Both the position numbers and the translations under genes were made by a program. From positions 124,001 through 188,000 of the IMG/VR virus record IMGVR_UViG_3300027816_000051: 64,000 nucleotides of DNA. One strand, written 5' to 3'. This document shows positions 1 through 42,421 of the stretch, piece by piece; position 1 is the stretch's first letter, and the number at the start of each line of letters is the position of its first letter. The notes under the pieces were generated by a model. It saw nothing but the letters and a program-made list of their open reading frames with translations. It did no database searches and was not told the origin of the DNA.

Positions 1-1
1 G

Positions 2-367: not shown

Positions 368-411
368 TGATAAAATAATGATTTAAGTATTTATAGAAAG
401 AATAGTAATAA

Positions 412-2976: not shown

Positions 2977-3039
2977 AATAACTTTACTATAAAATAGGAT
3001 TTTTTATATTTATCAAATATAGAAATCAATAATTAAAAA

Positions 3040-3888: not shown

Positions 3889-3913
3889 ACATTGAATTTA
3901 TATTTATGAAATA

Positions 3914-4264
3914 ATGCCGTCATTAGTAACATACTCAGTAACAATATCAAATTTTTCAGGACAAACACCTTGTAACGGGTACTATATCTACACAGGGTTA
4001 ACACATAATATTGATGATGCAAATTATATCAATGGGGTTGAAGTTTTAATTCCAATATCAACGGGATATACGTTTAATATAAGTTTATTGGATAACATAC
4101 CACAAATTTTTGTATTTGTGGAACACTGTGACGGACACATAAACCCTGTACCATCATCGGTACCAAAATTGCAAGGTGGTTATCAATTAGCATTAGTTGA
4201 TTTAAGATGTAGTGATTGTTACTACCCATGTGCATTTAATGTTAATGTTGTTCAAATAACGTAA
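3914..4264 (+). CDS. Small Cys-containing beta-rich putative virion protein
   Basis: YYIYTGLT...IFVFVEHCDG resembles the central module of 4268..7189 (CTVYTGLT...IYVRIDCEG). Confidence 0.6.
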   Translation: MPSLVTYSVTISNFSGQTPCNGYYIYTGLTHNIDDANYINGVEVLIPISTGYTFNISLLDNIPQIFVFVEHCDGHINPVPSSVPKLQGGYQLALVDLRCSDCYYPCAFNVNVVQIT

Positions 4265-4267
4265 TAA

Positions 4268-27728: not shown

Positions 27729-27730
27729 AA

Positions 27731-28021: not shown

Positions 28022-28022
28022 A

Positions 28023-29090: not shown

Positions 29091-29102
29091 AATTAAAGAA
29101 AA

Positions 29103-29408: not shown

Positions 29409-29409
29409 T

Positions 29410-29703
29410 ATGGCGAATGAATTACTTCTATTTACACTTGAGGGTTGTGGAGGTTGTAAAAGATTAAAAGAGAGACTCCAAAAAGAATCATTACCTTACC
29501 GAGAAGTTGAAGTTGGTAAGAATAAAGAGATTTGGAATAAAGTAATTGAACAAACGGGTAATGAATATTTACCCGCCTTTTACATTAAAAAAGACGACAC
29601 TGGTAAAGGACCCTTTTTTTGTCCCGAAAAAGATTTTAATGGGGACGACGAGGCGTTAGCAATTATATTAAAATACATTGAAAAAAAAGAAGGGGGTCAA
29701 TAA
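29410..29703 (+). CDS. Glutaredoxin-like protein
   Basis: FTLEGCGGCK CxxC; YLP cis-Pro region. Confidence 0.7.
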   Translation: MANELLLFTLEGCGGCKRLKERLQKESLPYREVEVGKNKEIWNKVIEQTGNEYLPAFYIKKDDTGKGPFFCPEKDFNGDDEALAIILKYIEKKEGGQ

Positions 29704-29714
29704 CCCCCTTTTTT
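29690..29714. terminator. Bidirectional intrinsic terminator between convergent operons
   Basis: AAGGGGGT-CAATA-ACCCCCTT with an A run before and a T run after. Confidence 0.8.
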
Positions 29715-30774
29715 ATTTAACTAAACTATTAATCCATTTATAGGTTTTTTCCATTCCATAGAACAGAGGTTCACTAACAACCCAACCTATTTTTTCGTGG
29801 TATAATTTATTGTCTGAATTTCTTCCCCTCACACCAACAGGACATTTATATCCATACTTCTGTTTAAATTCTTCCCCACCAATATTTCTGATATAAATTT
29901 CTTTACCTGAAATATCTATAGCCATTTGAGCCAAATCATTAATTGTTACTTTCTCTTCAGAACCAATGTTTACAGGACCCAAAAAAGAGTCTTGTCTCAT
30001 TAGTCTTAAAACCGCTTCAACACATTCATCCACATATAAGAATGAACGAGTCTGTTGACCATCACCCCAAACTTCAATTTCTCCACCGTCTAACATTTCG
30101 GCAACTTTTCTACACATAGCTGCTGGTGCTTTTTCTTTACCACCTTTCCACGTACCATATGGACCAAATATGTTATGAAATCTAGCAATTCGAACATCCA
30201 AACCGTGATTTCTGTGAAAAGCCAAGTACAACCTTTCCGAAAAAAGTTTTTCCCAACCATATTCTGAATCAGGATTCGCGGGATATGCTGATGATTCTTC
30301 ACAATTTGGGTTGTTAGGGTCTAATTGATTGTGTTCAGGATACATACATGCCGATGATGAATAAAAAATCTTCTTAACTTTTGTCTTCACTGATTCATTT
30401 ACAACATTTAAATTTATCATTGCAGAATTGTGCATAACATTCGCGTCATTTTCACCAGTGAAGATGTAACCAGCACCACCCATATCGGCAGCTAATTGAT
30501 AAACCTCATCAAATGGGACCTCAGTTGAATATGGTTGTTTGTAATAATTAAACGGTAATATCGTACCATTTAATTCTTCTAATCTCATTACTGATGATAC
30601 GTTTTTTGGGTCCGTAAGGTCATATATTAAGAATTCGTCACAAAAGTCTTTCTCATCAAAATATTCGTGTCTTTTTATATCAACTACTCTTACGTAGTTT
30701 CCTTCATTTTTTAATCTTTTTGCTAGGTGACCACCAATAAATCCGCCACCACCCAATACTAATACTCGTTTCAT
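29713..30774 (-). CDS. NAD-dependent epimerase, GDP-mannose 3,5-epimerase-like
   Basis: GGGGFIG, QLAADMGGAGYI, SSACMYPE, YGWEK, KAPAAMCRK, VRGRNSDN. Confidence 0.85.
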   Translation of the reverse strand: MKRVLVLGGGGFIGGHLAKRLKNEGNYVRVVDIKRHEYFDEKDFCDEFLIYDLTDPKNVSSVMRLEELNGTILPFNYYKQPYSTEVPFDEVYQLAADMGGAGYIFTGENDANVMHNSAMINLNVVNESVKTKVKKIFYSSSACMYPEHNQLDPNNPNCEESSAYPANPDSEYGWEKLFSERLYLAFHRNHGLDVRIARFHNIFGPYGTWKGGKEKAPAAMCRKVAEMLDGGEIEVWGDGQQTRSFLYVDECVEAVLRLMRQDSFLGPVNIGSEEKVTINDLAQMAIDISGKEIYIRNIGGEEFKQKYGYKCPVGVRGRNSDNKLYHEKIGWVVSEPLFYGMEKTYKWINSLVK

Positions 30775-31388
30775 TTTATTTTTTTAAAAAATCCCTCACC
30801 AAAATTATTACCCCACCAAAATTGTTCAACACAGGTAAACCCATGATGTGTCATCCAATTGTTTATTTCATCAAAGTGTGGACAACCTTTATATAATTCG
30901 GCTCTGTTTATTTCTACAATAACGTAGTCAATGTTGATTAATGTATTCACGGAACCTTTGAGAACCTCTAATTCAAAACCTTGAACATCGATATTCATCA
31001 TGTTGTATTTTGAAAAATCGTAATTTAAATCATCCAATCTATCCATTTCAACTTCTTCTACAGAATCAAAAACGATATGAGGAAATTGAACAGAATGTAA
31101 TTTCGGTTCTAATATTGAGGATGACATACCTTTATTAAAGGATTCTACAAACATAGAAACTTTTCTCTTTTCATTACCTAACGCCAGTTTAACTAAAATT
31201 GCGTCATCATCTATTTTTTCTTTTAAGGTCTCAAAATTAGACGATAGAGGTTCAAAGTATATTCTGTTTGAAATACCCAATTCCTTATAAACTTCATCTT
31301 CTTGACCAAAATGTGCACCAACGTGAATCACACCATGGATATTAACATTATGATTAATCATAAATGTCTTTAGCTCTATATTATTCAT
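30771..31388 (-). CDS. FkbM-family methyltransferase
   Basis: IHVGAHFG, YFEP, IDVQGFELEVLKG. Confidence 0.85.
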   Translation of the reverse strand: MNNIELKTFMINHNVNIHGVIHVGAHFGQEDEVYKELGISNRIYFEPLSSNFETLKEKIDDDAILVKLALGNEKRKVSMFVESFNKGMSSSILEPKLHSVQFPHIVFDSVEEVEMDRLDDLNYDFSKYNMMNIDVQGFELEVLKGSVNTLINIDYVIVEINRAELYKGCPHFDEINNWMTHHGFTCVEQFWWGNNFGEGFFKKIK

Positions 31389-32182
31389 TCTCTATCCTCT
31401 TTATATTTGTCTTTATTATACAATAAATCCCTGTGTTTTTCAAGTATTTTTGCTGCGTTTACGTAAACTAAATTATTATGTAATGATTGATTTTTTTGTC
31501 TAGTGGTCCCCCATCCAGGTTCGGAAATATAATCTATCGTATATAAACCTGACACTTTTCCGAGTTCTTTGAATGCTCTCATGGACATATCCATATCATC
31601 ATAATTTTGGGGTGAAAAATATTCGTCTAAAAAATTTAATTTGACCACGTCATTATAGTTGTACATTAGTGGACCTCTGTTACCATATTCTCTAGCATAA
31701 AAAATATCTCTTGATGAGTTATCTTTATGTGCAATATCGATGTAATTTATTTGTTTTGTTTGTTCATTATAGATGTTATTGTGAGCAACAAAAGATGTTA
31801 CAGCGAACACATCACTATATTTTATGAACGGTTCCAACATCCTCTTATCAAAATCTTTTTCTGTGACAACCATATCATCTTGGATTAAGACCACATAATC
31901 ATTTATAACAGACTTTAGACCAATATTATTTGCTTTGGTTTCAAAAACATTGTCGGCATACAGGTAATCAATTTTTTTATTACTAACTCTCTTTAAATTG
32001 TCACGAACAATACCTTCACTATTATCTGTACAACCATCAAAAACTATTACAATCTGGTCATTCAGTTCTGATAAATTATTTACCAAGTTACTCACCACTT
32101 GGTTCATTAAGAATTCCTTGTTGTGAATTGTCAATACTACTGATGTTTTCATTTTAAAAGATATTTTGATAATTCTATACAA
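31385..32182 (-). CDS. GT2 (GT-A) glycosyltransferase
   Basis: SVVLTIHN, FDGCTD, LIQDD, YDDMDMSMR. Confidence 0.8.
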   Translation of the reverse strand: MYRIIKISFKMKTSVVLTIHNKEFLMNQVVSNLVNNLSELNDQIVIVFDGCTDNSEGIVRDNLKRVSNKKIDYLYADNVFETKANNIGLKSVINDYVVLIQDDMVVTEKDFDKRMLEPFIKYSDVFAVTSFVAHNNIYNEQTKQINYIDIAHKDNSSRDIFYAREYGNRGPLMYNYNDVVKLNFLDEYFSPQNYDDMDMSMRAFKELGKVSGLYTIDYISEPGWGTTRQKNQSLHNNLVYVNAAKILEKHRDLLYNKDKYKEDRE

Positions 32183-32910
32183 TCACCTTTTCTATCAAAC
32201 AGGTGGTCAACATAATTATACGTTTCAATCACGTTATAATTTTCTTTGTGAAAAATCCAATTATTTGCCGTTTGCTCACAACAATGATAAATCTTCGAGT
32301 CTGTATCAGTCACATCTGAAATGTCTACCGATATCATATCTTCCATAATTTTTTTTGCTTGGTGAATATTGTAATCCGCGGGCAACCCAAAAATACCTAA
32401 ATTATAAATTTTAAAATCTAAATCATTTGTAACCTGTTTACATATTTTTATTTCACCCCATCTCGGGTCACCATTCCTAACGATTCTTTCATACTTCCAA
32501 ACCATAATAGAATTATCATCAATTTGTGGTAATTCCGAATGAAAAAATAAATCATTATCGATTTTTACAGTGTACTCAGTTTCTGATTTTGCATAATTAA
32601 TAAAATCATTTAAAACTGTAAAACTATAATTAAGACTTTCATTGTATTTGGTAAGTTGTTCCGTGTAATCAATATAAATAATTCTGTCTTGGTCAATGTT
32701 ATACTTGTTCATTTTTTCTTTCATACCCTCAACATCATCAGTATAAAGATGTAAAATACTTTTTCTATTCTTATCAATAAATGAAGCATAAGATGCTGAT
32801 GAATAATCAGATATAAACTCTTTATTTTTGTAGACATCAAACGCCCATTTCCGACCGATTTGGGACATTTTATTTAAGTCATAATTATAATTTAATGCAA
32901 TAAATTTCAT
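32149..32910 (-). CDS. Putative GT-A-like transferase
   Basis: LHLYTD, VKIDND (DxD), NLGIF, CEQ; operon context. Confidence 0.5.
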   Translation of the reverse strand: MKFIALNYNYDLNKMSQIGRKWAFDVYKNKEFISDYSSASYASFIDKNRKSILHLYTDDVEGMKEKMNKYNIDQDRIIYIDYTEQLTKYNESLNYSFTVLNDFINYAKSETEYTVKIDNDLFFHSELPQIDDNSIMVWKYERIVRNGDPRWGEIKICKQVTNDLDFKIYNLGIFGLPADYNIHQAKKIMEDMISVDISDVTDTDSKIYHCCEQTANNWIFHKENYNVIETYNYVDHLFDRKGDCIELSKYLLK

Positions 32911-33581
32911 GGTATATATACGTTGTATTTTATTCTATAATCGAGACAATAATCAAATTTTAAATTATGTTTCACAACCAAGTTAGTTAATATACTTTGG
33001 TCATTTCTATGGAATTGCCAATTTGGAAAATTCTCACCAATTTGATTTGGTTCATTGTCAACTATCTGTTTAATACTACAATACTTAAAATAATCGTGAA
33101 CAAATTCCATCATTTGTTTGGTTTTTTTAATGATGATAAATCCTGCTTCCATCTGTGGTGTTTCATGAAACTTTTCTTCATCACAATCCATCAAGATAAA
33201 ACAGTCTCTTTTTGTACATATTTTTTGAGGCCAACGATTTCCATTCCAATTTGTAAAATAATAATCATTATCTTTCAAATAATTTGCAATCGTATTATAA
33301 TCAACATCAACTAAATCACCGGCATCGGTATAAATTAATGCATCCCCATCTTCTAATTCATTCAAAATATCTAAAATAATTTTTGGTTTCCACAACCAAA
33401 ATCCATCACCCGTTTCACAATCTAATATTTCTTTATGGTTTTCATAAAAAATACCTTTCTTAACATCTTCAGATTTAAATCCTCGGATATCATTGAAACC
33501 ACGTGAATTATAATATCCGATTAATTTTTGAACGGTGTTACTAAATTTATTGTTGGTGTAAAAAGATAGAACAATTTTCAT
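32907..33581 (-). CDS. Putative glycosyltransferase (GT-A-like)
   Basis: FWLWKP, IYTDAG, HRNDQSIL. Confidence 0.55.
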   Translation of the reverse strand: MKIVLSFYTNNKFSNTVQKLIGYYNSRGFNDIRGFKSEDVKKGIFYENHKEILDCETGDGFWLWKPKIILDILNELEDGDALIYTDAGDLVDVDYNTIANYLKDNDYYFTNWNGNRWPQKICTKRDCFILMDCDEEKFHETPQMEAGFIIIKKTKQMMEFVHDYFKYCSIKQIVDNEPNQIGENFPNWQFHRNDQSILTNLVVKHNLKFDYCLDYRIKYNVYIP

Positions 33582-33583
33582 TA

Positions 33584-34285
33584 TTAATGTATCCCCCGAA
33601 CATTTACGTTTATTTCATATTCATTTATTAATGGAGAGAGTTCATTAGGGTATTCAGATAAATTCCATTTACCTCTAACTAAAGCCGTTGCTATATATGG
33701 ATAAACAGAACTATCAAAATGATTCAACCCCCTTTTGTTTTCACCATCGTAATGATATAAACCTTTGATGTTGTTTTCTATCATAAAATTTCTATATGTT
33801 TCATTCTCTAACCACATATTATTTTTGGTACCTTTCATGATTTTAATGTAATCATCTTTTTTCCAAATAGTTGGTTGCATAGAAAATATATCTTTATTGT
33901 CGGATTCTATTTCATATAAGGTCTCATAAATTTTTTTATCTTTAACAGACCCCGATTTTAACAATCTAATGAACGAATATTCTTGGTTATCATGTAAAAA
34001 ATCGAGGTAATTAAAAATTTTATCATGACTGACATTGTTATAAAGAATAAAGTCTTCTTGTAAGTATATAAAATAGTCATATGGTATTGAAGATAAACAC
34101 TTTAACCATGATTCATAATAAGGTTCTTGATTTTCATATAAAAAACAAATTTGCTCGGGTATCATTACATCTGTAATAAAATACATCGGTAAGTTTGTGT
34201 ACTTTTTTTGTTCTAACAAGAACATATCCAAAATATCTGAACATTTTGAATTTGTATAAGTAACGTAACAAATTTTATTATCCAT
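33584..34285 (-). CDS. Putative glycosyltransferase (GT-A-like)
   Basis: YLQEDF, FSMQPTIW; operon context. Confidence 0.5.
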   Translation of the reverse strand: MDNKICYVTYTNSKCSDILDMFLLEQKKYTNLPMYFITDVMIPEQICFLYENQEPYYESWLKCLSSIPYDYFIYLQEDFILYNNVSHDKIFNYLDFLHDNQEYSFIRLLKSGSVKDKKIYETLYEIESDNKDIFSMQPTIWKKDDYIKIMKGTKNNMWLENETYRNFMIENNIKGLYHYDGENKRGLNHFDSSVYPYIATALVRGKWNLSEYPNELSPLINEYEINVNVRGIH

Positions 34286-35012
34286 AAGGTGTTAAATTTT
34301 TGTTGATATAAACCACATCCATTTCTGTGTTTGAAGATTCTGGCGACTCGTCTATTGGTATAAACCTATTTAGTTTTTCATCTAGTTCAGATTTACTTGT
34401 AGAACCACGATATAATTCCTGTAACCCTACTTCGGTGGTTATTATTTTTACATCATTTAAATATTCTTTTAGAGAGTCTAATACGATATTTTCTGCACCT
34501 TGAACATCCATCCAAATCAAATCAACACTTTTAATATCATTTTCTTTTAACCAATCACTAAGAACAATACAGTCAACCTCAGTTTCCTTTTGGGCCCACT
34601 GAGATGAACGCCAGTGGTTTGTTGTCTGTAATAAAGAACTGGCACCCACATTTCCATTATAAACTTCGTAAAATTTAGTTTTACCGTTGTAATTGTTTAT
34701 TGCGTATTGGTAAACTTTTATGTTATTAATTTTCTCAACGTTCTTAACTGTAAATTCGTAGTTTTCTTTTACTGGTTCAAACGCATATATTTTAGCATGT
34801 GGAAACCATCTATTTAACTCTAAACTTTGGCAACCATCTCTTGACCCAATATCTAATATTGTGTTGACATCATTAAAGTCAATTTTATCTTTTATAACAT
34901 TAATCATTTTTGTTGTCCATAATGGACATCTACCATTCAAATCGGTAAAGGCACCCCTATTTAATTCATCTTGAGTAAATGCGTCGTCAATAAATTTTGA
35001 ATTATCTATCAT
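34278..35012 (-). CDS. FkbM-family methyltransferase
   Basis: LDIGSRDG, YAFEP, WMDVQGAE. Confidence 0.85.
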   Translation of the reverse strand: MIDNSKFIDDAFTQDELNRGAFTDLNGRCPLWTTKMINVIKDKIDFNDVNTILDIGSRDGCQSLELNRWFPHAKIYAFEPVKENYEFTVKNVEKINNIKVYQYAINNYNGKTKFYEVYNGNVGASSLLQTTNHWRSSQWAQKETEVDCIVLSDWLKENDIKSVDLIWMDVQGAENIVLDSLKEYLNDVKIITTEVGLQELYRGSTSKSELDEKLNRFIPIDESPESSNTEMDVVYINKNLTPYG

Positions 35013-35023
35013 TTTTATAATTT

Positions 35024-35614
35024 TTAAATCACCACCATACTATAACATGGTGCGTCTTTATATGTGGACAAATTAATATTTCGTTTTAACCAAAAAATTT
35101 CATTATCATTACTTAATTCGCCACCCATAAAGTTTATATTTTTATAGTTAAGTGATATTATATTTTCCGTGATTATTTTTTCCGAATACTCATCGTGTAT
35201 GGTAGATACATTCCAAATATCAAACACCGTATCTATTTCACCCTCCACAAAATAATCAACAAAATATTTTCCTTCATTATGCCAAGTCAAAAAATTTACA
35301 CACTCTTTTTTAAATGTGGAAACTAATCTATTTGCATTAGATGGTAGTAAATCACTTCTCCATTTAAGGACTCTGTTGTAACCTATTTCTTTGGCTTTCA
35401 TTATTCCATTCAAAGTTGATATTTTTTGTAGTGCTATATTTTGTACACCCCTATCGTGTGGAATACTGTTGAATAAGACAACATCATTAGTATCGTATTT
35501 TGATTCTTCACCTTGCCATGTTGACCAAATCAAATCATAACCAGTCCAAGCGTTTTTTAATTCTTTAACGTAGTCTGAAGGTCCTTGTACTATGACACAA
35601 AAATCATTATTCAT
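35024..35614 (-). CDS. WavE-like glycan biosynthesis protein
   Basis: VIVQGP, QKISTLNG, LKWRSD pattern. Confidence 0.45.
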   Translation of the reverse strand: MNNDFCVIVQGPSDYVKELKNAWTGYDLIWSTWQGEESKYDTNDVVLFNSIPHDRGVQNIALQKISTLNGIMKAKEIGYNRVLKWRSDLLPSNANRLVSTFKKECVNFLTWHNEGKYFVDYFVEGEIDTVFDIWNVSTIHDEYSEKIITENIISLNYKNINFMGGELSNDNEIFWLKRNINLSTYKDAPCYSMVVI

Positions 35615-35620
35615 ACTGAA

Positions 35621-36340
35621 TTAAAATTTTGATATGTGATTATGATATTGTGACCCTTCATACATGTATGGTCTAGTTATTTTATTATGTATGAATACAT
35701 CTAATGCGGAACCAAAATCAATATAAGTGTTATTACTATTATTTGTAAACATATGTTTTATGATAACAGCAGATGTTGGTCCACAACATACGATAAATAA
35801 AGTATCTTTATATTTTGAAGAAACATTGTATATTTTTTCTAAAAACGAATCTCTATGTTCTTCCCAATAGTTTACACAATCATTAGGGAACGGTACAAAT
35901 TCTGATACACTAAATGGTATGTTTTTTAAATCACAATTTTCATTACAAATTAAAACAACATCTCGATTTATATTTCTTATTCTTGATATATTTTCTTTGT
36001 AATTTGCGTTAATCCATAGGTTAGCAAATGTAATGTTTGATTTATTTTGTATTCTATCATATAAAAAATTATAGTCTCTAATACTATCAGTTTTGGAGGA
36101 TATTGCAAAATAAAAATTTGGGTCGTTCAACCCTATACATTCATTTAAATCCACACCTAATTTGGTTTGTCCCCCACTCGAAAACCATTTATCGTTTTGA
36201 TACGCTTGTGTATTCTTTTCTATCGGTGAATTATTCATTAACATCACTTCACCATCGGCATATCTAACAAAAGAAAAGTTAGTTCGACTATCTATCTTTT
36301 CCCAAAACGAATTAAAATCTTCAATATACTTTTCAATCAT
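35621..36340 (-). CDS. GT-D fold (DUF1792-like) glycosyltransferase
   Basis: FSFVRYADGE, CCGPTSAVI, YIDFGSALD correspond to the DUF1792 RFGDGE, GPTA and DIG motifs. Confidence 0.6.
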   Translation of the reverse strand: MIEKYIEDFNSFWEKIDSRTNFSFVRYADGEVMLMNNSPIEKNTQAYQNDKWFSSGGQTKLGVDLNECIGLNDPNFYFAISSKTDSIRDYNFLYDRIQNKSNITFANLWINANYKENISRIRNINRDVVLICNENCDLKNIPFSVSEFVPFPNDCVNYWEEHRDSFLEKIYNVSSKYKDTLFIVCCGPTSAVIIKHMFTNNSNNTYIDFGSALDVFIHNKITRPYMYEGSQYHNHISKF

Positions 36341-37061
36341 TTAATATTGTCTTAAATCCTTTATTTACATACCCACGGTAAACTTCACCCATTAAATTCA
36401 TATTTGAATGATTTACGGAAATTGCGTTGGAATCAGTTCCATGTTCCCATGCATATTCTGGTATACTACCCCACATTTCTCTATTTTCTTTAGGATGGGG
36501 AGGAACGTAAGTTCCGATATTTGCGTATTTCTGTAATGTATATGAAAAGTGCATATCCTCACCAACTAATTTACTCTGATTGATTTCAGGTAATTCTCTC
36601 CAAAATATCGATAACCATTCTCTTTTAAAGAACCACGAGTGACCAACAATGTCGACCTTTTCAATTTCTTCGTTAGGTTGGTCCCAACCGACTCTTGTTG
36701 CTGGCCAATAAGAGTTTTTTGTGTGAAATTTTACACCGATAGTTCCTAATAAACCTTCTTGAATTTTCATGGTGTTTAGACAGTTTTCTAACCATAGTTT
36801 ACCCGGTATTGTGTCATCATCAAAAACACAAATATATTCTGTGTTGGCATTTAAAGCAAATGCAAATCTTGCCCACACACCTAAATTACTATTACAAGAT
36901 GCGTGAATTAAATCTTTGGTTAGTCCCTCATCAAATTGAGAACCAGAATTTTGCCAAAATAAAATTGATTCGGGTTGGACACTTTGATTTCTAATTGATT
37001 CCAATTGTTTTTGGAGAACATGTGGTCTTTTATACCCATTTAATATTACCGTTATACTCAT
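36333..37061 (-). CDS. GT2 glycosyltransferase
   Basis: VILNGYKR, CVFDDD, GEDMHFS. Confidence 0.75.
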   Translation of the reverse strand: MSITVILNGYKRPHVLQKQLESIRNQSVQPESILFWQNSGSQFDEGLTKDLIHASCNSNLGVWARFAFALNANTEYICVFDDDTIPGKLWLENCLNTMKIQEGLLGTIGVKFHTKNSYWPATRVGWDQPNEEIEKVDIVGHSWFFKREWLSIFWRELPEINQSKLVGEDMHFSYTLQKYANIGTYVPPHPKENREMWGSIPEYAWEHGTDSNAISVNHSNMNLMGEVYRGYVNKGFKTILND

Positions 37062-38050
37062 ACAATTTTTCTAAATATTTCAATGATTCTTTCACAAGAA
37101 TTACCATCACCAAAAGGACAATCATATTCTGTTTGGAAATCGTTAATAATATCGTAAAAAATACCTTCTAAGTCAATGGGTTTTTTACATATAAAAGACG
37201 TTTTACCCAAGGACTCAGGTCTCTCAGTTTTTTCTCTACATACAATAACTTTCTTATTTAGGAACGACGCCTCTTCTTGAACACCCCCACTATCTGAAAT
37301 TAGTAATTTACAGGATTTGAATTCCTCAATAAATTTATCATGGGTTAATGGTTCAATAACATCAACATGTGTCAATATATGTTTGTGTTTTATGACGTTT
37401 GGGTTTGGGTGTATTGGAAGAATGAATTTTAATTCAGGATTATTCTTTGCTAATCGATTGATAACATCAAACCACTCCGACATCATCTCATGATTCTCTC
37501 TTCTATGTAAAGTGATTAAGACTTTATTTTCGTATGTAATATTTTCTTTATTAAGATTATCTAATACGGTATTGCCAACTACAAAATTTTTACCCTGAAC
37601 TTTTTCATTTTCTAAGTTCATCTTGTTACTTTCTGTTGGGCAAAGATTATAGTTTGAAATTCTACTAATTAACTGCCGATACATTTCTTCGGGGTAAGGG
37701 TGATTGTAGTCATATGTCCGTAATCCCGCTTCTAAATGAATCACTTCTTTTTTATGGTGTAATCCTATTAGGGATAATGAAAGAGCGGTTGCGGTGTCCC
37801 CTTGGATAAGTATATGTGTAACCCCTTCCAAAAATTCTTTTTTAAAATTTAAAAATACGGATGACATAATACTATCCAATCTATTTTCACACGTATCATC
37901 AATGGATAATTTATAATCAAAATCACCCAATACAATATCTTTGTGTTGGGTAACATATAAAATTTTATGGGGAATACTTTCCCCACACATTTCTATTAAT
38001 TTTTTTATTTTAATATACTCAGGTCTTGTGCCGTAACAAAATAATATCAT
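37058..38050 (-). CDS. wecB: UDP-N-acetylglucosamine 2-epimerase (non-hydrolysing)
   Basis: GTRPE, QGDTATA, HLEAGLR, PEE, GNTVLD, TLHRREN, DSGGVQEEA, ERPE, FGDG. Confidence 0.92.
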   Translation of the reverse strand: MILFCYGTRPEYIKIKKLIEMCGESIPHKILYVTQHKDIVLGDFDYKLSIDDTCENRLDSIMSSVFLNFKKEFLEGVTHILIQGDTATALSLSLIGLHHKKEVIHLEAGLRTYDYNHPYPEEMYRQLISRISNYNLCPTESNKMNLENEKVQGKNFVVGNTVLDNLNKENITYENKVLITLHRRENHEMMSEWFDVINRLAKNNPELKFILPIHPNPNVIKHKHILTHVDVIEPLTHDKFIEEFKSCKLLISDSGGVQEEASFLNKKVIVCREKTERPESLGKTSFICKKPIDLEGIFYDIINDFQTEYDCPFGDGNSCERIIEIFRKIV

Positions 38051-38868
38051 ATATAAGTTGAAATGATTTCTAAATTTTTTAAAGTGTTAGTTTCTAAGAA
38101 ATCAATTAATTCATCACCTGATAACCTATTAAACCATTCTTCTAAACTTGCACCATAATTTTGTGTCGTTATTACTTCCAAACCTAAACATTTTGCCTCA
38201 ACAACCAGTCTACAAAAAGTTTCTCTTGCTATCGGGAAAAACACAATACCTTTACATTTGGCCATATTACTTAAAAATTCAACTCTGTCTTTAGATTCTT
38301 TAAGAATATGGACCGGTAATTTATTTTCAGAACAATACTTCAGACTACCTTGGGTGTTCTTTATCCAATTATTTGTATAGTAAACAGAATATTTGTCGTT
38401 TTTAACATTGTTGGATTTATTTAAATTCCTCAATAATTCTAAGTCCTCATTTGACCATATCGAACTATTCAGATTTATAAAATTAGCAACAACATCGTTT
38501 TTAAGATAAACGTTCATGTGGTCGGTTGTTTGAACAAATACCGCTTTTGCATTCCGGTAAAGAGAATAGTTGGTTCTTTCCTCAATCGGAATTATGTTGT
38601 CGGTATATCTCCATGGGTGTCTACTTGCACATATTTTATAATCGTTTTCAATAATGACGTAGTTCAAATTTTGTATTTGATTAACCAAGTTTGGGTTCAT
38701 CAAAGAAATATTTGATATAATATACAGGGCGTTGTAATCAAATGACTTGACTTGGTTTGAATATTCAAACTCAAGATTAAATCTATCAATTAAAACTTGA
38801 TTCACCCATTCAGAACCACCGTGAGGTACTTCTTTAATGGTAAAATCCGATATAAGTATTTTCCTCAT
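38047..38868 (-). CDS. GT-B (GT4-like) glycosyltransferase
   Basis: GGSE; PIARETFCRLVVEAKCLG matches the E-x7-E motif. Confidence 0.65.
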   Translation of the reverse strand: MRKILISDFTIKEVPHGGSEWVNQVLIDRFNLEFEYSNQVKSFDYNALYIISNISLMNPNLVNQIQNLNYVIIENDYKICASRHPWRYTDNIIPIEERTNYSLYRNAKAVFVQTTDHMNVYLKNDVVANFINLNSSIWSNEDLELLRNLNKSNNVKNDKYSVYYTNNWIKNTQGSLKYCSENKLPVHILKESKDRVEFLSNMAKCKGIVFFPIARETFCRLVVEAKCLGLEVITTQNYGASLEEWFNRLSGDELIDFLETNTLKNLEIISTYI

Positions 38869-39587
38869 ATAACTTGATAATTTTCTTTTAACATGCTGTC
38901 CATGTAATTGAATGGTAAATTAAAATAATGTTCACCGAATTTATGTTGTTTATTGAACGATGACAATCTCTTTGCTCTTGAAATGTAAATGTTCTTCACG
39001 TAGTCTTTACCCAAGAATTTATAGTGAAGAAGTTTTATTTCCCGCTCATCCGAAAATTTACCATCAACAGAATTAAAACTGTGACCACCAATGCCGTATT
39101 TTATATCTAAATCAGGATGAAAAATTATATTTTTACACATTGGTTCATACGTTTGTGAACCTGTTTTAATTTTTGTTGTAATGAATTCACCGTCGTATAT
39201 TGGAAATTCAGTACTAACCATGTCGTGACCGTCTATTCTTGGGACGGTTATACCCATTTCTTTGTACTCTTGAAGTTTATCCATAAGATTTTCATGGTAT
39301 ATAAACTCATCACAGTCACAAACTATAACCCAATCAACACCCTGACCTCTACTTCTTTTTTTATACTCTTCGGATTTAATGTTTACGTAATTAATTTCAT
39401 TTATTTCATTACCACTATCCCATTTAATAACCTCAACTTTTGGGTACCTCTTATAAATCTCATCAGAGGAGTCCGTTGACATATTATCGTATATGAATAT
39501 TTTTTCACAGATTGTACTATAGTAATCCAATGTGAATGGTAATATTTTTTCTTCATTCCATGACAGTATATGTGCGTGTATCTTCAT
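38865..39587 (-). CDS. GT2-like glycosyltransferase
   Basis: WNEE, DNMSTDSS, IVCDCDE, LLHY. Confidence 0.75.
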   Translation of the reverse strand: MKIHAHILSWNEEKILPFTLDYYSTICEKIFIYDNMSTDSSDEIYKRYPKVEVIKWDSGNEINEINYVNIKSEEYKKRSRGQGVDWVIVCDCDEFIYHENLMDKLQEYKEMGITVPRIDGHDMVSTEFPIYDGEFITTKIKTGSQTYEPMCKNIIFHPDLDIKYGIGGHSFNSVDGKFSDEREIKLLHYKFLGKDYVKNIYISRAKRLSSFNKQHKFGEHYFNLPFNYMDSMLKENYQVI

Positions 39588-39588
39588 T

Positions 39589-40368
39589 TTAAAATATGTT
39601 TTTCCAAAGTGTTAATATCTCTTCGTTACTTAATTTAGAAACTTCATTCATAGTCTCTTCATTACCATAAAACTCTGTACCGGTTAAATAACATTCATCT
39701 TTAACCAAACAAGCAACCTCACCCTTTGATGAGTGATATACCTTACCAATCATATCGTACATTTCTTGTTTATTGGTGGTGTGACCGTAATGAATTACTC
39801 TTGGATTCATTAAAGGTTTTACCAATTTGTCAAAATAGTTTTGGTCACCGATGTGACCGAACAAATAGATTTTTTCACACCTGTCTTTTAATGCTCTTTG
39901 TATTGACACATGGGTCTGTTTTCTGTCTTCAATTGTACCAATAATTCCTGCAATATTTCTTACCAGCTCTTTATTTGAAATAATTAAATTTTCTTTGATG
40001 TTTGGTATTATTACATAATCACCCCTGTAATCCGAGTGATATTTTCGATGCTCTTCATGTAAAAACACGCACAGGTCCCAATACTGTTTAATTTTACCAA
40101 CAGGGAACCACCATTTTTCATGACAAGACAAAATAACTTTTTTAACAGGTGGTCTTTCCTGTAGTTGTAAAAAATGGGTAATTACAATATCATCAGATTC
40201 ATACTTTAAATCTTTTTCAATGTTCCCTGATTTACATTTGTCTAAATGGTAATTCTGATTACCGTAAAATGTGCAATCAATACCATTTTCATTTAAGAAA
40301 TTTGTTAAGTTTATAAAAAAAGTGGTAGAACCACCTTTTTCTGTAAATCCCGATACAATTTTTATCAT
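39589..40368 (-). CDS. GT-B-like glycosyltransferase
   Basis: GGSTTFFINL, SCHE, KGEVACLVKDEC (E-x7-E variant). Confidence 0.55.
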   Translation of the reverse strand: MIKIVSGFTEKGGSTTFFINLTNFLNENGIDCTFYGNQNYHLDKCKSGNIEKDLKYESDDIVITHFLQLQERPPVKKVILSCHEKWWFPVGKIKQYWDLCVFLHEEHRKYHSDYRGDYVIIPNIKENLIISNKELVRNIAGIIGTIEDRKQTHVSIQRALKDRCEKIYLFGHIGDQNYFDKLVKPLMNPRVIHYGHTTNKQEMYDMIGKVYHSSKGEVACLVKDECYLTGTEFYGNEETMNEVSKLSNEEILTLWKNIF

Positions 40369-41822
40369 CTTAATTGTTTGATATTTTTTCTAATTTCAGG
40401 TGAGTTTATGTACTGACCTAAGACTTGTTTTAATTCAACATCAACCTTTTCAAATTTTGATGCCATATCAATCATTACCACACTGTTTGTGTCAATGAAT
40501 GTTTTACGTTTTTTAAGTAAAGTTTTCAACGCAAAATCTAAGTTATAAATTGATGTTTCTAAATTAATATCAAACCAATCAATCATTTTTAAATTTGTAG
40601 ATGTAGTGGCAAAAAAGTCACTAATACTACCAAAATTGTTTGGAAAGTGTCCGTGTAAAATATTGAAAAAAGATGATTTGTTTTTAAAAATTAAATTGAA
40701 CTGTTCGTTGTTTTGAACTATATCCAATCCATTTGAAAAAATTGTTCGGTCGTTTTCTAATACTGTAGGAAAGACGCACCCAAAAGTATTTTTTTCACTC
40801 TTAAATATTGAATACATACTTGAGAAAACGTCGTTCAATACGGTAACAGTATCATTACTGAAAAATAACAAATCTGTTTTTGATTCCATAAACGATTCAT
40901 CCCATTTCAGTACTGATAAGTTTTTATTTAATGTATCAAAAAAACCCTCGTAAATTTTAATATTTTCAGATTCAAATTCTCTAATATTGTCTATATTGGT
41001 ATCCGTCGAGATGAGTGAAATCTGTAAACTATCAAACACTGGTAATTTTTTTATGTTTTCAAAAAACTGAATTAAATTTTCATTATCGTTTGATGTTTGA
41101 ACTATTAAATTAAATTTATCTTTAAACTGTTTTGGTTTGGTTATGTCATAATCAATTTTTGGTGTTATATTAATTGGTAGGTTCTCTTTAAATTTTTCAA
41201 TGTAAAATTCCCTATTCTTTTCCCAAGAATCATTGGTCATTCCGATTGATTTGTGAGTGATTCTTATGTTGTATATAACACCGATGTTTACCTCACTTAA
41301 GTGATTGCTAGTACAGAATACCATATCATAAAAATGAAAACCCGGTACTGACTCATCAAAAGTGTGTTTTATTCTGTTTTTGTGGATTCCAATGAATAAA
41401 CCATCCACTAAACAAACTTCGTGAATTGAATTTGGGATTCCATTTGCATATCTCGATTCCCATTTTTTACCCTCATTTTCATGATTAACAATACCAACCA
41501 TTTTGGTATTATCTGTCCACCACCTACCACTCTCATGAATATTGGTTGTACCGGCAACACCGAGAATCCCGTAGTCAGATTCTTCAAAATGTTTGACTAA
41601 TTTTCTACCCCACGAAGTCGTATTAAAGTAAATGTCATCATGACAAAGTACGACAATATCATGAATCGACTCTTGAATAATTTCATTGTAAGTTTGTGAA
41701 AGACTTTTTTCACCATTGTTTACTTTTTCAATAACTTGAACTTTGGGGTGTCCACAAGTTTTTTTTAAATATTCTTGAAATTTTGGGTTGGACTCTCTTG
41801 TACTGTAACCTATTGTAATCAT
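40365..41822 (-). CDS. Two-domain GT2-like glycosyltransferase
   Basis: YN...LCHDD, GVAG, VDGLF, GFHFYD; second, degenerate GT-A-like domain. Confidence 0.7.
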   Translation of the reverse strand: MITIGYSTRESNPKFQEYLKKTCGHPKVQVIEKVNNGEKSLSQTYNEIIQESIHDIVVLCHDDIYFNTTSWGRKLVKHFEESDYGILGVAGTTNIHESGRWWTDNTKMVGIVNHENEGKKWESRYANGIPNSIHEVCLVDGLFIGIHKNRIKHTFDESVPGFHFYDMVFCTSNHLSEVNIGVIYNIRITHKSIGMTNDSWEKNREFYIEKFKENLPINITPKIDYDITKPKQFKDKFNLIVQTSNDNENLIQFFENIKKLPVFDSLQISLISTDTNIDNIREFESENIKIYEGFFDTLNKNLSVLKWDESFMESKTDLLFFSNDTVTVLNDVFSSMYSIFKSEKNTFGCVFPTVLENDRTIFSNGLDIVQNNEQFNLIFKNKSSFFNILHGHFPNNFGSISDFFATTSTNLKMIDWFDINLETSIYNLDFALKTLLKKRKTFIDTNSVVMIDMASKFEKVDVELKQVLGQYINSPEIRKNIKQLR

Positions 41823-41871: not shown

Positions 41872-42072
41872 TTAAAATTTGGAACCGTTTGGTGCAAGAC
41901 CGTTGTGATTATCAATTTGTTTTCTAAAATCTTCTCTAGTGTTATATAGGTCAAGAGCTCGGTTTACTAATTTTTGTAGATTGATTGAACCATCTACACT
42001 TTTTATCTTAAATCTTTTATAAACATCATCTATGATGTTAACGCTGGTTAGTTTTGTTTGTTGTTTAGGCAT
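41872..42072 (-). CDS. Ribbon-helix-helix DNA-binding protein
   Basis: LTSVNI strand, DDVYKRFK helix, LQKLVNRALDLY helix; start moved to MPKQQ. Confidence 0.6.
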   Translation of the reverse strand: MPKQQTKLTSVNIIDDVYKRFKIKSVDGSINLQKLVNRALDLYNTREDFRKQIDNHNGLAPNGSKF

Positions 42073-42148
42073 AATATAAGTATATAAATTTATATATATT
42101 ATAAAAGACAAAAAATATCGGACAATTTATTAGACTGTCCGATACAAT

Positions 42149-42334
42149 TTATTGTCCTTCTGTGTTTTCTTCGTTAGTTTGATTGTTAATCTCCTCAACC
42201 TTTTTTATGATTTGGTCAAGTTGTTGTTCCATAATTGTAATCTCCTGTGGAGGTGTTGAACCACCTTCGGTTAGTTGAATGTTTACCGTTTGATTACTAA
42301 CAGGTTGGTTTCTTTTTTTACATCCGCATCCCAT
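42149..42334 (-). CDS. Small MGCGCKK protein
   Basis: ORF track; reverse-strand TATTTAT at 42351-42357. Confidence 0.65.
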   Translation of the reverse strand: MGCGCKKRNQPVSNQTVNIQLTEGGSTPPQEITIMEQQLDQIIKKVEEINNQTNEENTEGQ

Positions 42335-42421
42335 GATTTTAAGTTTTTTTATAAATATTTTGGTTTATTGTTTTTTATTCGTTATCTTTTGTAATAATAA
42401 TAAATAGAAAACAATTTGTCA

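What the first reader, a model, noticed from the sequence alone, without database searches (positions are those of the whole stretch)
35621..36340. GT-D (DUF1792-like) enzyme, a family known for glycosylating Ser-rich repeat adhesins
The RYADGE, GPTS and DFGS motifs mirror DUF1792. In streptococci this family extends the O-glycan on the serine-rich repeat protein Fap1. Finding it in a phage with Thr/Ser-repeat proteins is the most specific link to protein O-glycosylation.
Basis: partly seen in the sequence, partly recalled or inferred. Interest (0 to 1): 0.6.

Follow-up and report, generated by a model that had tools for sequence, protein, structure and literature searches.

The report
Phage GT-D-fold glycosyltransferase gene
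A freshwater jumbo phage carries a real but very divergent GT-D-fold sugar-transferring enzyme that belongs to a four-gene core of a 15-gene glycan-building operon. Its nearest cellular relatives sit in bacterial LPS gene clusters, so it does not by itself show that the phage glycosylates its Thr-rich proteins.

Summary
The ORF at 35621-36340 (-) is real and encodes 239 aa. The RYADGE, GPTS and DFGS motifs are present and are the most conserved columns of a family of at least 197 proteins.

The link to serine-rich-repeat adhesin glycosylation is not supported.
- The gene is translationally coupled to a GT2 gene.
- GT2, a WecB-type UDP-GlcNAc 2-epimerase and a cryptic GT-A gene accompany it in nearly all related phage loci.
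- In bacteria the same GT-D and GT2 are fused into one protein of about 535 aa. That protein lies mostly in ABC-transporter O-antigen or LOS loci.
- Giant viruses carry similar fusions.
- The phage encodes no lipid-carrier primer, exporter or GtfA.
- One complete relative has the cluster but no Thr-repeat protein.

Best reading: a soluble, Mn-dependent enzyme that extends a glycan, probably one containing ManNAc. The acceptor is unresolved. I put phage virion proteins at about 0.45 and host lipid-linked polysaccharide at about 0.3.

The parts
35621..36340 (-). GT-D-fold glycosyltransferase, 239 aa (the finding). Candidate Mn site is D29-G30-E31.
36333..37061 (-). GT2 (GT-A fold) partner glycosyltransferase, 242 aa, with an invariant FDDDT motif. 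Its stop overlaps the GT-D start by 8 nt.
   Evidence: PF00535 E 1e-6. The overlap ATGATTGA is seen in the sequence. Present in 22 of 22 non-identical related phage loci. Fused to the GT-D domain in bacteria. Invariant columns.
37058..38050 (-). Non-hydrolysing UDP-GlcNAc 2-epimerase (WecB type), the presumed supplier of UDP-ManNAc.
   Evidence: PF02350 E 4e-60. TIGR00236 wecB scores 209.9 bits against a cut-off of 210.15. Present in 20 of 22 related phage loci. Adjacent or near in 5 of 7 bacterial contexts.
33584..34285 (-). Cryptic GT-A-fold glycosyltransferase, 233 aa, with no Pfam, NCBIfam or PHROG hit. Invariant E77-D78.
   Evidence: No family hits. AF2 pLDDT 90.5. Foldseek matches B4GALNT1, Mimivirus R699 and SpsA at E about 1e-7 to 1e-6. 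Present in 19 of 22 related loci and immediately downstream of GT-D in 13.
35024..35614 (-). 196-aa protein of unknown function, directly downstream of GT-D.
   Evidence: No hits. A homologue in L008 carries a faint WavE mark. Present in 14 of 22 loci.
34278..35012 (-). FkbM-family methyltransferase, probably a sugar O-methyltransferase.
   Evidence: PF05050 E 1e-19.
29713..33581 (-). Distal, variable part of the operon: an SDR sugar epimerase/dehydratase (29713-30774), a second FkbM methyltransferase (30771-31388), a GT2 (31385-32182) and two unknown proteins (32149-32910, 32907-33581).
   Evidence: Pfam hits. Patchy presence in relatives, 2-10 of 22. Replaced in the close relative L041.
38047..41822 (-). 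Proximal part of the operon: a 273-aa protein with a weak GT1 hit (38047-38868), a GT2_4 (38865-39587), a 259-aa unknown (39589-40368) and a 485-aa Glyco_tranf_2_5 protein with a C-terminal extension of about 270 aa (40365-41822).
   Evidence: Pfam hits. Present in 4-7 of 22 loci.
29690..29710 (-). Terminator-like GC-rich hairpin followed by a T-run, directly after the last gene of the operon.
   Evidence: 9-bp stem with 5 GC pairs, then CTTTTTTTTC.
42350..42357 (-). TATTTATA, a perfect copy of the phage's morphogenesis-class promoter-like motif. It heads the minus-strand unit upstream of the cluster.
   Evidence: The motif sits 11-27 nt before most of 41 gene starts (up to 50 nt in a few), including terminase, portal and Thr/Pro-rich protein genes. 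PWM score 18.1 here; training range 10.8-20.2. Sequence.
41872..42334 (-). Two small ORFs (61 aa at 42149-42334; 66 aa at 41872-42072) and a hairpin (42115-42145) between the promoter motif and the first GT gene.
   Evidence: Sequence read. Hairpin. Their function is unknown, and the hairpin may limit read-through into the cluster.
1..7189 (+). Candidate acceptor proteins (inferred only): the 3' end of the 5472-aa ORF (1-367) and the Thr/Pro-repeat proteins at 412-2976, 3040-3888 and 4268-7189.
   Evidence: Translations. Composition 38-67% T+S+P. TATTTATA lies before 412 and before 7227. No direct evidence of glycosylation.

Best explanation
The gene encodes a soluble, single-domain, GT-D-fold Leloir glycosyltransferase. 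It uses an Asp29-x-Glu31 site to bind a divalent metal and a nucleotide-sugar, and it adds one sugar to the non-reducing end of a growing glycan.

It does not act alone. It is translationally coupled to a GT2 enzyme. Together with a WecB-type UDP-GlcNAc 2-epimerase and a cryptic GT-A enzyme it forms the conserved core of a variable 15-gene, single-strand operon in a freshwater jumbo myophage of at least 288 kb. In bacteria the same GT-D and GT2 are one bifunctional protein, so the two phage enzymes most likely catalyse consecutive, or alternating polymerase-like, additions. One of those sugars is probably ManNAc made by the neighbouring epimerase. The FkbM methyltransferases would decorate or cap the chain.

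All 15 proteins lack membrane segments, and the phage has no lipid-carrier primer or exporter. I therefore think the glycan is built in the cytoplasm and ends up on phage structural proteins, for which the giant Thr/Pro-repeat proteins are the obvious candidates. This would resemble what giant viruses do with their fibrils.

Shown: the fold, the motifs, the gene coupling, the conserved module, the bacterial fusion, and the absence of export genes. Inferred: catalytic activity, the ManNAc donor, polymerase-like action, and the acceptor.
For: Fold and motifs:
- The AF2 model has pLDDT 95.7.
- Foldseek's top three hits are 4PHR, 4PFX and 5V4A, at E 1e-6 to 9e-5.
- The family profile hits only DUF1792 structures and aligns the DGE, GPT and D-x-G motifs. 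These columns are invariant.
- Asp-x-Glu binds Mn2+ in DUF1792 (PMC6493773).

Module:
- The GT2 stop and the GT-D start overlap by 8 nt.
- GT2 is present in 22 of 22 related loci, WecB in 20 of 22 and the 233-aa GT-A in 19 of 22. Other cluster genes are present in 2-14 of 22.
- The 233-aa protein folds as GT-A.

Fusion:
- In the Spirochaetia 533-aa protein, residues 11-231 are 36% identical to the phage GT-D (E 8e-43). Residues 246-490 are 41% identical to the phage GT2 (E 7e-64).
- At least 280 such fusions exist in many bacterial phyla.
- Stand-alone and fused forms split cleanly on a tree, with SH-aLRT 100.

ManNAc:
- The epimerase scores at the cut-off of the wecB equivalog model.
- An epimerase lies next to or near the fusion in 5 of 7 bacterial loci.
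- No GT26 (WecG/TagA) ManNAc transferase is found in three phage genomes.

Cytoplasmic and virion-directed:
- None of the 15 cluster proteins has a TM-like segment.
- PF02397, PF00953 and PF01061 are absent, and no protein has five or more TM-like segments, in the 92%-complete genome of the same phage and in two complete relatives.
- The best viral structural matches are Homavirus (giant virus) multidomain proteins at 31-35% identity and TM 0.90-0.94.
- The only recognisable promoter-like motif upstream in the right orientation is the TATTTATA type, which also precedes the terminase, portal and Thr/Pro-rich protein genes. No host-type TAnnTTTG motif is there.
- Four adjacent proteins with 38-67% T+S+P lie among the tail and baseplate genes.
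Against: - No enzyme activity, donor or acceptor has been measured.
- The protein is below the curated cut-offs of PF08759, PF22882 and NF040628.
- The closest cellular homologues sit mostly in Wzm/Wzt O-antigen-type or LOS loci, where the acceptor is lipid-linked.
- Peripheral GTs of such pathways also lack TM segments. The absence of membrane proteins therefore does not exclude use of the host's primer and exporter.
- The complete relative G001 (345 kb, terminal repeats) has the module but no Thr/Ser-repeat protein.
- A terminator-like hairpin lies between the TATTTATA motif and the first GT gene. The next motif copy scores 8.1, below the training range.
- No transcript data could be obtained.
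- The complex prediction for GT2 with GT-D could not be run.
Confidence: 0.45

Rival explanations
1. The enzyme and module are the same, but the acceptor is the host's lipid-linked surface polysaccharide. The soluble phage GTs work at the inner face of the membrane on undecaprenyl-PP-linked O-antigen, capsule or LOS intermediates. The host primes and exports these, so the infected cell's surface is remodelled, for example to block superinfection or to stop progeny binding to debris.
For: - The nearest cellular homologues are GT-D-GT2 fusions inside Wzm/Wzt plus FkbM plus GT4 plus FnlABC loci (Spirochaetia, Aquirufa, an ENA contig). One lies in a locus with two GT9 heptosyltransferases, WaaL and a lipid A acyltransferase.
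- The phage cluster shares gene types with those loci: FkbM methyltransferases, WecB, an SDR enzyme and GT2s.
- The centre of the cluster is swapped between close relatives, as in O-antigen loci.
- The module exists in a complete phage that has no Thr-repeat protein.
Against: - The phage genomes have no primer (PF02397, PF00953), no Wzm and no polytopic membrane protein. The model therefore needs a compatible host pathway.
- No host-type early promoter motif lies upstream, and the motif that is there is the morphogenesis type.
- In my recollection, known phage seroconversion systems have a few genes rather than 15.
- The same domain occurs in giant viruses of eukaryotes, which have no LPS to modify.
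Confidence: 0.3
2. One reading: an SRRP/Fap1-like pathway in which this GT-D adds glucose to a GlcNAc-primed Ser/Thr glycan on the repeat proteins, as DUF1792 of dGT1 does.
For: - The fold and the DXE motif are shared with DUF1792.
- The domain pairing GT-D plus GT-A is the same as in dGT1 (PMC5063993).
- Thr/Ser-rich repeat proteins are present.
- One Campylobacter homologue lies next to a Maf-like gene, a family I recall as linked to flagellin glycosylation.
Against: - Identity to DUF1792 is only 13-17%, and PF08759 does not detect the protein.
- No GtfA-like primer is found.
- The conserved partner is a WecB epimerase, which points to ManNAc rather than UDP-Glc.
- The repeats are Thr-Pro linkers and not Ser-rich SRR domains.
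- The module does not track such repeats in relatives.
Confidence: 0.07
3. The cluster glycosylates phage DNA (hypermodified bases) as an anti-restriction measure.
For: - Phage GTs that hypermodify DNA with glycans are known (cited in PMC12619734).
- A thymidylate-synthase-family gene (47317-48642) and two DNA methyltransferases lie near the cluster.
Against: - The ThyA-like protein scores as an ordinary thymidylate synthase: Pfam 300 bits and phrog_160 355 bits. No hydroxymethylase-specific evidence was found.
- A 15-gene cluster with nucleotide-sugar epimerases and sugar methyltransferases, whose homologues lie in LPS loci, fits polysaccharide assembly better.
- The promoter motif is the morphogenesis type.
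Confidence: 0.05
4. The protein has the GT-D fold but is not a glycosyltransferase. It would be another nucleotide-dependent transferase or a non-catalytic scaffold for the GT2.
For: Scores are below the cut-offs of the curated families. Only DUF1792 enzymes have been characterised for this fold.
Against: The metal motif and other pocket motifs are invariant across at least 39 relatives at 43-88% identity and across the bacterial fusions. That argues for catalysis. The protein is always embedded among GTs and sugar-nucleotide enzymes.
Confidence: 0.05

Closest known systems
DUF1792 / GT-D domain of dGT1 (GalT1) of Streptococcus parasanguinis, and the S. sanguinis DUF1792 enzyme (PDB 4PFX, 4PHR, 4PHS, 5V4A; Pfam PF08759)
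   Different: Only 13-17% identity, and below the PF08759 cut-off. Stand-alone at 239 aa against about 270. The partner GT2 is a separate, upstream gene. The conserved neighbour is a WecB epimerase. There is no GtfA/GtfB, Gtf3 or accessory Sec system. The setting is a phage, not an adhesin island.
Bacterial bifunctional GT-D-GT2 proteins of about 520-560 aa, annotated 'glycosyltransferase family 2 protein' (Spirochaetia MAG OY759746.1, Aquirufa, Campylobacter, Anaerolineaceae, Bacteroidales and others); uncharacterised
   Same: 36% identity in the GT-D part and 41% in the GT2 part. The RYADGE, GP-x-S, DFGS and TRPY motifs are conserved. A UDP-GlcNAc 2-epimerase lies next door. FkbM methyltransferases are in the same loci.
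   Different: These are fused into one polypeptide in the order GT-D then GT2, whereas the phage has two genes in the order GT2 then GT-D. They lie in loci with Wzm/Wzt exporters or LOS core genes, which the phage lacks. They form a separate clade.
Giant-virus glycosylation machinery (Mimivirus and Megavirinae fibril glycan clusters; Homavirus multidomain proteins A0A3G5A6A6 and A0A3G5A480)
   Same: The Homavirus proteins contain the same GT-D subfamily domain (31-35% identity, TM 0.90-0.94) fused to methyltransferase or GT2 domains. A Nucleocytoviricota cluster of 561-aa GT2 fusions also appears. Megavirinae clusters likewise combine a 2-epimerase, GTs and modifying enzymes, all soluble, and are proposed to glycosylate the fibril layer (PMC10117803). 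The 233-aa neighbour resembles Mimivirus R699 in fold.
   Different: The host is eukaryotic. No GT-D enzyme has been described in those papers (0 mentions). The Homavirus proteins are metagenomic and untested.
TagA/TarA/WecG (GT-E fold, GT26), UDP-ManNAc transferases
   Different: Different topology, metal-independent, and no Asp-x-Glu motif (PMC6493773). PF03808 is absent from the phage genomes.

Membership tests
GT-D structural class of glycosyltransferases | Single Rossmann-like domain with the DUF1792 topology | tested here: met
GT-D structural class of glycosyltransferases | Asp-x-Glu motif that coordinates Mn2+ | tested here: met
   D29-G30-E31 aligns with the D-G-E of 4PHR and is invariant in 39 relatives. 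The motif's role is described in PMC6493773. Metal binding itself was not tested.
GT-D structural class of glycosyltransferases | Transfers a sugar from a nucleotide-sugar to an acceptor | not testable with these tools
   Needs an enzyme assay.
Pfam PF08759 (GT-D, formerly DUF1792) | HMM score at or above the gathering cut-off of 27 bits | tested here: not met
   No hit for this protein at E <= 0.1 and none in the six-frame search of its genome. Only 5 of 39 relatives hit at E <= 0.01.
Pfam PF22882 (GT-D-like) | HMM score at or above 27 bits | tested here: not met
   21.9 bits, E 1.2e-4, although the alignment spans model positions 10-209 of 210. 5 of 39 relatives hit.
NCBIfam NF040628 (GT-D_rel) | Score at or above 75 bits | tested here: not met
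   21.6 bits, N-terminal 55 residues only.
Serine-rich-repeat adhesin glycosylation system (Fap1/GspB type) | GtfA/GtfB (Gtf1/Gtf2) O-GlcNAc priming transferase encoded alongside | tested here: not met
   TIGR02918 gives no match in the 92%-complete genome of this phage or in two complete relatives.
Serine-rich-repeat adhesin glycosylation system (Fap1/GspB type) | Ser-rich repeat substrate exported by an accessory Sec system | tested here: not met
   The repeats are Thr-Pro linkers in phage structural-region proteins. Accessory Sec genes were not searched for specifically. No polytopic membrane protein is encoded.
Lipid-linked (Und-PP) polysaccharide pathway encoded by the phage itself | Own polyprenyl-phosphate sugar transferase and own exporter or flippase | tested here: not met
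   PF02397, PF00953 and PF01061 are absent. No cluster protein has a TM-like segment. No protein has five or more such segments. Use of host components is not excluded.
Split form of the bacterial GT-D-GT2 bifunctional enzyme family | Both halves are homologous, adjacent and co-oriented | tested here: met
   36% identity at E 8e-43 and 41% at E 7e-64. 8-nt overlap of the two genes. GT2 present in 22 of 22 related loci.

The most novel reading that the evidence does not exclude
A bacteriophage autonomously builds a ManNAc-containing, methyl-capped polysaccharide in the bacterial cytoplasm. It does so with a split GT-D/GT2 polymerase pair and attaches the polymer to giant mucin-like Thr/Pro-repeat virion fibres. 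This would be a phage counterpart of Mimivirus fibril glycosylation, with a swappable 'serotype' island that diversifies the virion surface.
Probability: 0.25. Interest if true: 0.75.

Novelty: new member of a known kind. Interest (0 to 1): 0.42.

Why it matters
The solved and characterised GT-D enzymes I could find are the streptococcal DUF1792 ones. This gene belongs to a large, unannotated GT-D subfamily: at least 197 stand-alone viral proteins and at least 280 bacterial fusion proteins. The curated models miss the subfamily or reach it only below their cut-offs, and it spans jumbo phages, giant viruses and many bacterial phyla.

The Rosetta-stone fusion and the constant WecB neighbour give a concrete, testable biochemical hypothesis: a two-enzyme unit that builds a ManNAc-containing chain. 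That hypothesis would cover many uncharacterised O-antigen and LOS loci as well as the phage.

If the glycan proves to sit on the phage's Thr/Pro-rich fibres, it would extend virus-encoded virion glycosylation to environmental jumbo phages. Such glycosylation has been reported for giant viruses and mycobacteriophages (the latter as cited in PMC12619734).

As it stands this is a sound annotation with an open acceptor question, not a surprise.

Tried and rejected
- tblastn of the protein against 50,697 deposited phage genomes found no match. PHROGs gave no family. The isolate databases therefore give no help.
- A single-sequence PDB search gave only a chance hit. The profile was needed.
- My first impression was that the family is virus-only: all 120 listed hits are about 239 aa (185-245) and unnamed, and the genome-contig scan gave one hit. 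This was wrong. The length filter and the strict peptide patterns hid the bacterial fusions, which appeared when the fusion protein was used as query with region 1-240.
- In 301 Spirochaetota genomes only 2 matched, so the family is sporadic in that phylum.
- The (Thr-Pro)x5 DNA pattern was too strict as a test for repeat proteins. I replaced it with composition scans of the fetched genomes.
- The C-terminal extension of the 487-aa GT-D proteins in L038 and L039 is not detectably related to the 233-aa neighbour.
- Expression: no RNA run holds the locus. The two 'RNA?' runs are probably DNA and show only short, diverged contigs. There is therefore no evidence either way.
There is no verdict.
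- GREB1 was checked as a possible GT-D-like protein O-GT and rejected. It is Fringe-like.
- The Zhang 2014 DUF1792 paper and the Freeman 2023 mycobacteriophage paper are not held.
- The big representative-library search was not run. The fold and family question was settled without it, and its output carries no names or context.
Full report
**1. The observation**

The ORF at window 35621-36340 on the minus strand exists exactly as described and encodes 239 aa from an ATG. RYADGE lies at residues 26-31, GPTS at 187-190 and DFGS at 208-211.

A word-indexed search found 197 relatives. All 120 listed are about 239 aa long (185-245), and none is named beyond 'hypothetical protein'. In an alignment of 39 of them at 43-88% identity, the motif residues R26, A28, D29, G30, E31, G187, P188, S190, D208, G210 and S211 are invariant. 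The motifs are therefore family signatures, not chance.

**2. Is it GT-D?**

Curated sequence models only brush against the protein.
- PF22882 (GT-D-like) scores 21.9 bits against a cut-off of 27, although the alignment is end to end.
- PF08759 (DUF1792) gives nothing for this protein or in a six-frame search of its genome.
- NF040628 scores 21.6 bits against 75.
- Among the 39 relatives, five touch each Pfam model at E <= 0.01.

A profile of the family searched against all PDB sequences hits only 4PHR/4PHS/4PFX, the DUF1792 domain of GalT1/dGT1, at E 5e-4. It aligns RFGDGE with RYADGE, GPT with GPV/GPT, and IDLG with IDVG.

The AlphaFold model is confident, with pLDDT 95.7 and pTM 0.92.
- Foldseek's three best PDB matches are 4PHR, 4PFX and 5V4A, at E 1e-6 to 9e-5.

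The Asp-x-Glu motif binds Mn2+ in DUF1792 (PMC6493773). DUF1792 adds Glc from UDP-Glc to Glc-GlcNAc on Fap1 (PMC5063993).

Conclusion: the protein has the GT-D fold and the metal motif, but it belongs to a distant subfamily at 13-17% identity.

**3. The genome**

The window is part of a 155.7-kb IMG/VR virus record with estimated completeness 50%. Identical copies of the gene lie on 12 viral contigs of up to 288 kb.

The record encodes a tail sheath, a baseplate wedge protein, UvsX, DnaB and ribonucleotide reductase. The 288-kb copy also has terminase and portal genes. This is a jumbo myophage.

The DNA occurs at full word identity in lake and freshwater metagenomes of 13 studies. The nearest isolate by tail sheath is Microcystis phage Mel-JY01, at only 31.6% identity.

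About 40 small genes are preceded at -26 to -33 by TAnnTTTG. From my own knowledge this is the Bacteroidota -7 promoter element, so I take it as a host clue. The phage resembles the recently described freshwater 'moraphages' in four respects: size 200-307 kb, glutamine synthetase, several core GTs, and predicted Bacteroidota hosts (PMC12619734). I could not test membership of that lineage.

**4. The surroundings**

Fifteen co-oriented genes with tiny or negative spacers run from 41822 down to 29713. A strong terminator-like hairpin at 29710-29690 closes the run.

| Window coordinates | Size | Assignment |
|---|---|---|
| 40365-41822 | 485 aa | Glyco_tranf_2_5 with a C-terminal extension |
| 39589-40368 | 259 aa | unknown |
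| 38865-39587 | 240 aa | GT2_4 |
| 38047-38868 | 273 aa | weak GT1 hit |
| 37058-38050 | 330 aa | WecB-type UDP-GlcNAc 2-epimerase (TIGR00236 209.9 bits, cut-off 210.15) |
| 36333-37061 | 242 aa | GT2 |
| 35621-36340 | 239 aa | GT-D (the finding) |
| 35024-35614 | 196 aa | unknown |
| 34278-35012 | 244 aa | FkbM methyltransferase |
| 33584-34285 | 233 aa | unknown to the family libraries; GT-A fold (below) |
| 32907-33581 | 224 aa | unknown |
| 32149-32910 | 253 aa | unknown |
| 31385-32182 | 265 aa | GT2 |
| 30771-31388 | 205 aa | FkbM methyltransferase |
| 29713-30774 | 353 aa | SDR sugar epimerase/dehydratase |

The GT2 stop and the GT-D start overlap by 8 nt. The 233-aa protein has no family hit, but it folds confidently (pLDDT 90.5) as a GT-A enzyme, with best matches B4GALNT1, Mimivirus R699 and SpsA.

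**5. What is conserved with it**

I compared 22 non-identical related phage loci, whose GT-D is 27-48% identical to this one.
- The GT2 is present in 22. It lies immediately upstream in 10. In 10 others the order is GT2, WecB, GT-D.
- WecB is present in 20.
- The 233-aa GT-A is present in 19.
- The other cluster genes are present in 2 to 14.

The functional unit is therefore GT2 + WecB + GT-D + GT-A, inside a variable shell. In one close relative (L041) the flanks are about 80% identical in DNA. Its GT-D, however, is a 42%-identical allele at another position, and the centre of the cluster is replaced. The cluster behaves like a swappable glycan island.

**6. The key comparison**

The single hit in 185,579 species genomes was a Spirochaetia MAG. 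There the GT-D domain is the N-terminal half of a 533-aa protein (36% identity, E 8e-43). The C-terminal half is the homologue of the phage's neighbouring GT2 (41% identity, E 7e-64). This is a Rosetta-stone fusion with the same domain order as dGT1.

Using that protein as query, which lifts the length filter, revealed at least 280 such fusions of about 520-560 aa. They are annotated only as 'GT family 2' and come from Anaerolineaceae, Gastranaerophilaceae, Desulfobacterales, Campylobacter, Aquirufa, Bacteroidales and others. Stand-alone and fused GT-D domains form two clean clades, with SH-aLRT 100.

I examined seven bacterial contexts.
- Three are Wzm/Wzt ABC-transporter loci with an FkbM methyltransferase, GT4s and FnlABC-like genes.
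- One is an LOS/core locus with two GT9 genes, WaaL and a lipid A acyltransferase, with PglB nearby.
- One lies beside a Maf-like gene.
- One is polysaccharide-like.
- One is an orphan.

A UDP-GlcNAc 2-epimerase is adjacent or within three genes in five of the seven.

The same domain also occurs in giant viruses. Two Homavirus proteins of 611 and 675 aa match at 31-35% identity and TM 0.90-0.94, and are fused to methyltransferase or GT2 domains. A Nucleocytoviricota cluster of 561-aa GT2 fusions also appears.

**7. Mechanism**

Shown: a GT-D fold with an invariant DXE motif; translational coupling to a GT2 with an invariant FDDDT motif; a conserved four-gene module; and fusion of the two GTs in bacteria.

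Inferred:
- The two enzymes add consecutive sugars to one chain. By analogy with multidomain enzymes of ABC-transporter O-antigen pathways (my own knowledge), they may alternate as a polymerase.
- One donor is UDP-ManNAc. The grounds are the constant WecB neighbour and the absence of any GT26 ManNAc transferase in three phage genomes. The weaker structural kinship with the ManNAc transferases TagA/TarA is only suggestive.
- The FkbM enzymes methylate or cap the glycan.

**8. The acceptor**

*For phage proteins:*
- None of the 15 proteins has a TM-like segment.
- The 92%-complete genome of this phage and two complete relatives lack PF02397, PF00953 and Wzm, and have no protein with five or more TM-like segments.
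- Giant viruses, which have no LPS, use the same domain.
- The only promoter-like motif upstream in the right orientation is a perfect TATTTATA at 42350-42357. That motif lies 11-27 nt before most of 41 gene starts (up to 50 nt in a few), including terminase, portal and the Thr/Pro-rich 854-aa and 716-aa genes. No host-type TAnnTTTG is present there.
- The phage has four adjacent proteins with 38-67% T+S+P next to its tail genes.

*Against phage proteins:*
- The closest cellular homologues work in LPS-type loci.
- Soluble peripheral GTs are normal in such pathways.
- A hairpin lies between the motif and the first GT gene.
- The complete 345-kb relative G001 has the module but no Ser/Thr-repeat protein. 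The 274-kb relative G002 has a poly-Thr protein and collagen-like (G-S/T-S)n giants instead.

I therefore put virion protein glycosylation at about 0.45 and host lipid-linked polysaccharide at about 0.3. The literal Fap1-like reading, DNA glycosylation and a non-GT role each get about 0.05-0.07.

**9. Comparison with known families, and novelty**

The protein works like DUF1792 in fold, metal motif and pairing with a GT-A. It fails the sequence-family cut-offs, and the system lacks every other part of the SRRP pathway: no GtfA, and repeats that are Thr-Pro linkers rather than Ser-rich domains (accessory Sec genes were not searched for specifically). Its true family is the uncharacterised GT-D-GT2 family of bacterial surface-glycan loci, here split into two genes.

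I found no paper that describes GT-D enzymes in phages or giant viruses. One ESM Atlas cluster of phage proteins is already auto-named 'GT-D fold domain-containing'.

I rate the finding a new member of a known kind. The annotation is solid, the biochemical hypothesis is useful, and the question of what carries the glycan remains open.

**10. Limits**

- There is no expression evidence.
- The TM test is a simple hydropathy scan.
- The promoter classes are inferred from motif enrichment and position only.
- Gene calls in the fetched genomes come from a simple longest-ORF script.
- The host is unknown.

Noticed in passing
G000:C1:43073-59491 (its last 367 bases are window 1-367): A single 5472-aa ORF with 67% Thr+Ser+Pro and 52 Thr/Ser-Pro repeat runs lies directly after the tail and baseplate genes. 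It is followed by three more Thr/Pro-repeat proteins. This is a mucin-like giant protein in a phage.
   Followed up: partly
G005 (the 288-kb copy of this phage), e.g. 212905-235562; within the window before 50994, 55681 and 60064: About 40 mostly small genes are preceded at -26 to -33 by TAnnTTTG. From my own knowledge this is the Bacteroidota -7 promoter element, so it hints at a Bacteroidota host.
   Followed up: partly
window 388-395, 7211-7218, 42350-42357(-), 58746-58753, and 37 more sites in G005: TATTTATA lies 11-27 nt before most of 41 start codons (up to 50 nt in a few), including those of terminase and portal. About two thirds of all 60 genomic copies (41 sites) lie within 60 nt upstream of a start codon. 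It is likely the phage's own morphogenesis-class promoter.
   Followed up: partly
L041 (IMGVR_UViG_3300032287_004025) against window 25187-38397: This close relative is about 80% identical in DNA in the flanks. Its GT-D allele is only 42% identical and sits at a different position, and the centre of the cluster is replaced. The pattern recalls O-antigen serotype switching.
   Followed up: partly
L008:17468-18649; ORFs of similar size in L009, L026, L029 and L030: A RuBisCO-large-subunit-family (PF00016) gene lies inside the glycosylation cluster of related phages, next to an NTP-transferase and an FkbM methyltransferase. It may be a RuBisCO-like protein used in sugar chemistry. It is not present in this window.
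   Followed up: no
window 33584-34285 (-): This 233-aa protein has no Pfam, NCBIfam or PHROG hit. It is a confident GT-A-fold glycosyltransferase whose relatives are almost all viral.
   Followed up: yes
window 47317-48642 (+): A thymidylate synthase of 441 aa, against a Pfam model of 266 positions. The match is stretched over residues 6-344, so the protein carries large insertions or an extension.
   Followed up: no
window 44255-45379 (+): A glutamine-synthetase-like gene, an auxiliary gene also reported in freshwater 'moraphages' (PMC12619734).
   Followed up: no
window 26838-27728 (+) and 42416-43270 (+): Two DNA methyltransferase genes flank the glycosylation operon.
   Followed up: no
G002 (IMGVR_UViG_3300034104_003795): 253594-255042, 135219-138470, 185836-195045, 197089-208278: This related complete phage has a protein with a run of 26 consecutive Thr. 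It also has several proteins of 1083-3729 aa with long collagen-like (Gly-Ser/Thr-Ser)n repeats in place of Thr-Pro repeats.
   Followed up: no
L038:9986-11449 and L039:9986-11446: In two related phages the GT-D is the N-terminal half of a 487-aa protein. The added C-terminal domain of about 250 aa shows no detectable similarity to the usual 233-aa neighbour.
   Followed up: partly
BFVD A0A2P1ELU1 (Moumouvirus australiensis, 325 aa): This is a weak structural match (E 4e-3). It has the same length as ma463, the 325-aa 'glycosyltransferase*' that lies three genes from the 2-epimerase ma460 in the Moumouvirus fibril glycosylation cluster (PMC10117803). The identity of the two was not verified.
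   Followed up: no
window 41872-42072 (-) and 42149-42334 (-): Two small ORFs (66 and 61 aa), separated by a hairpin, sit between the TATTTATA motif and the first GT gene. Their function is unknown.
   Followed up: no
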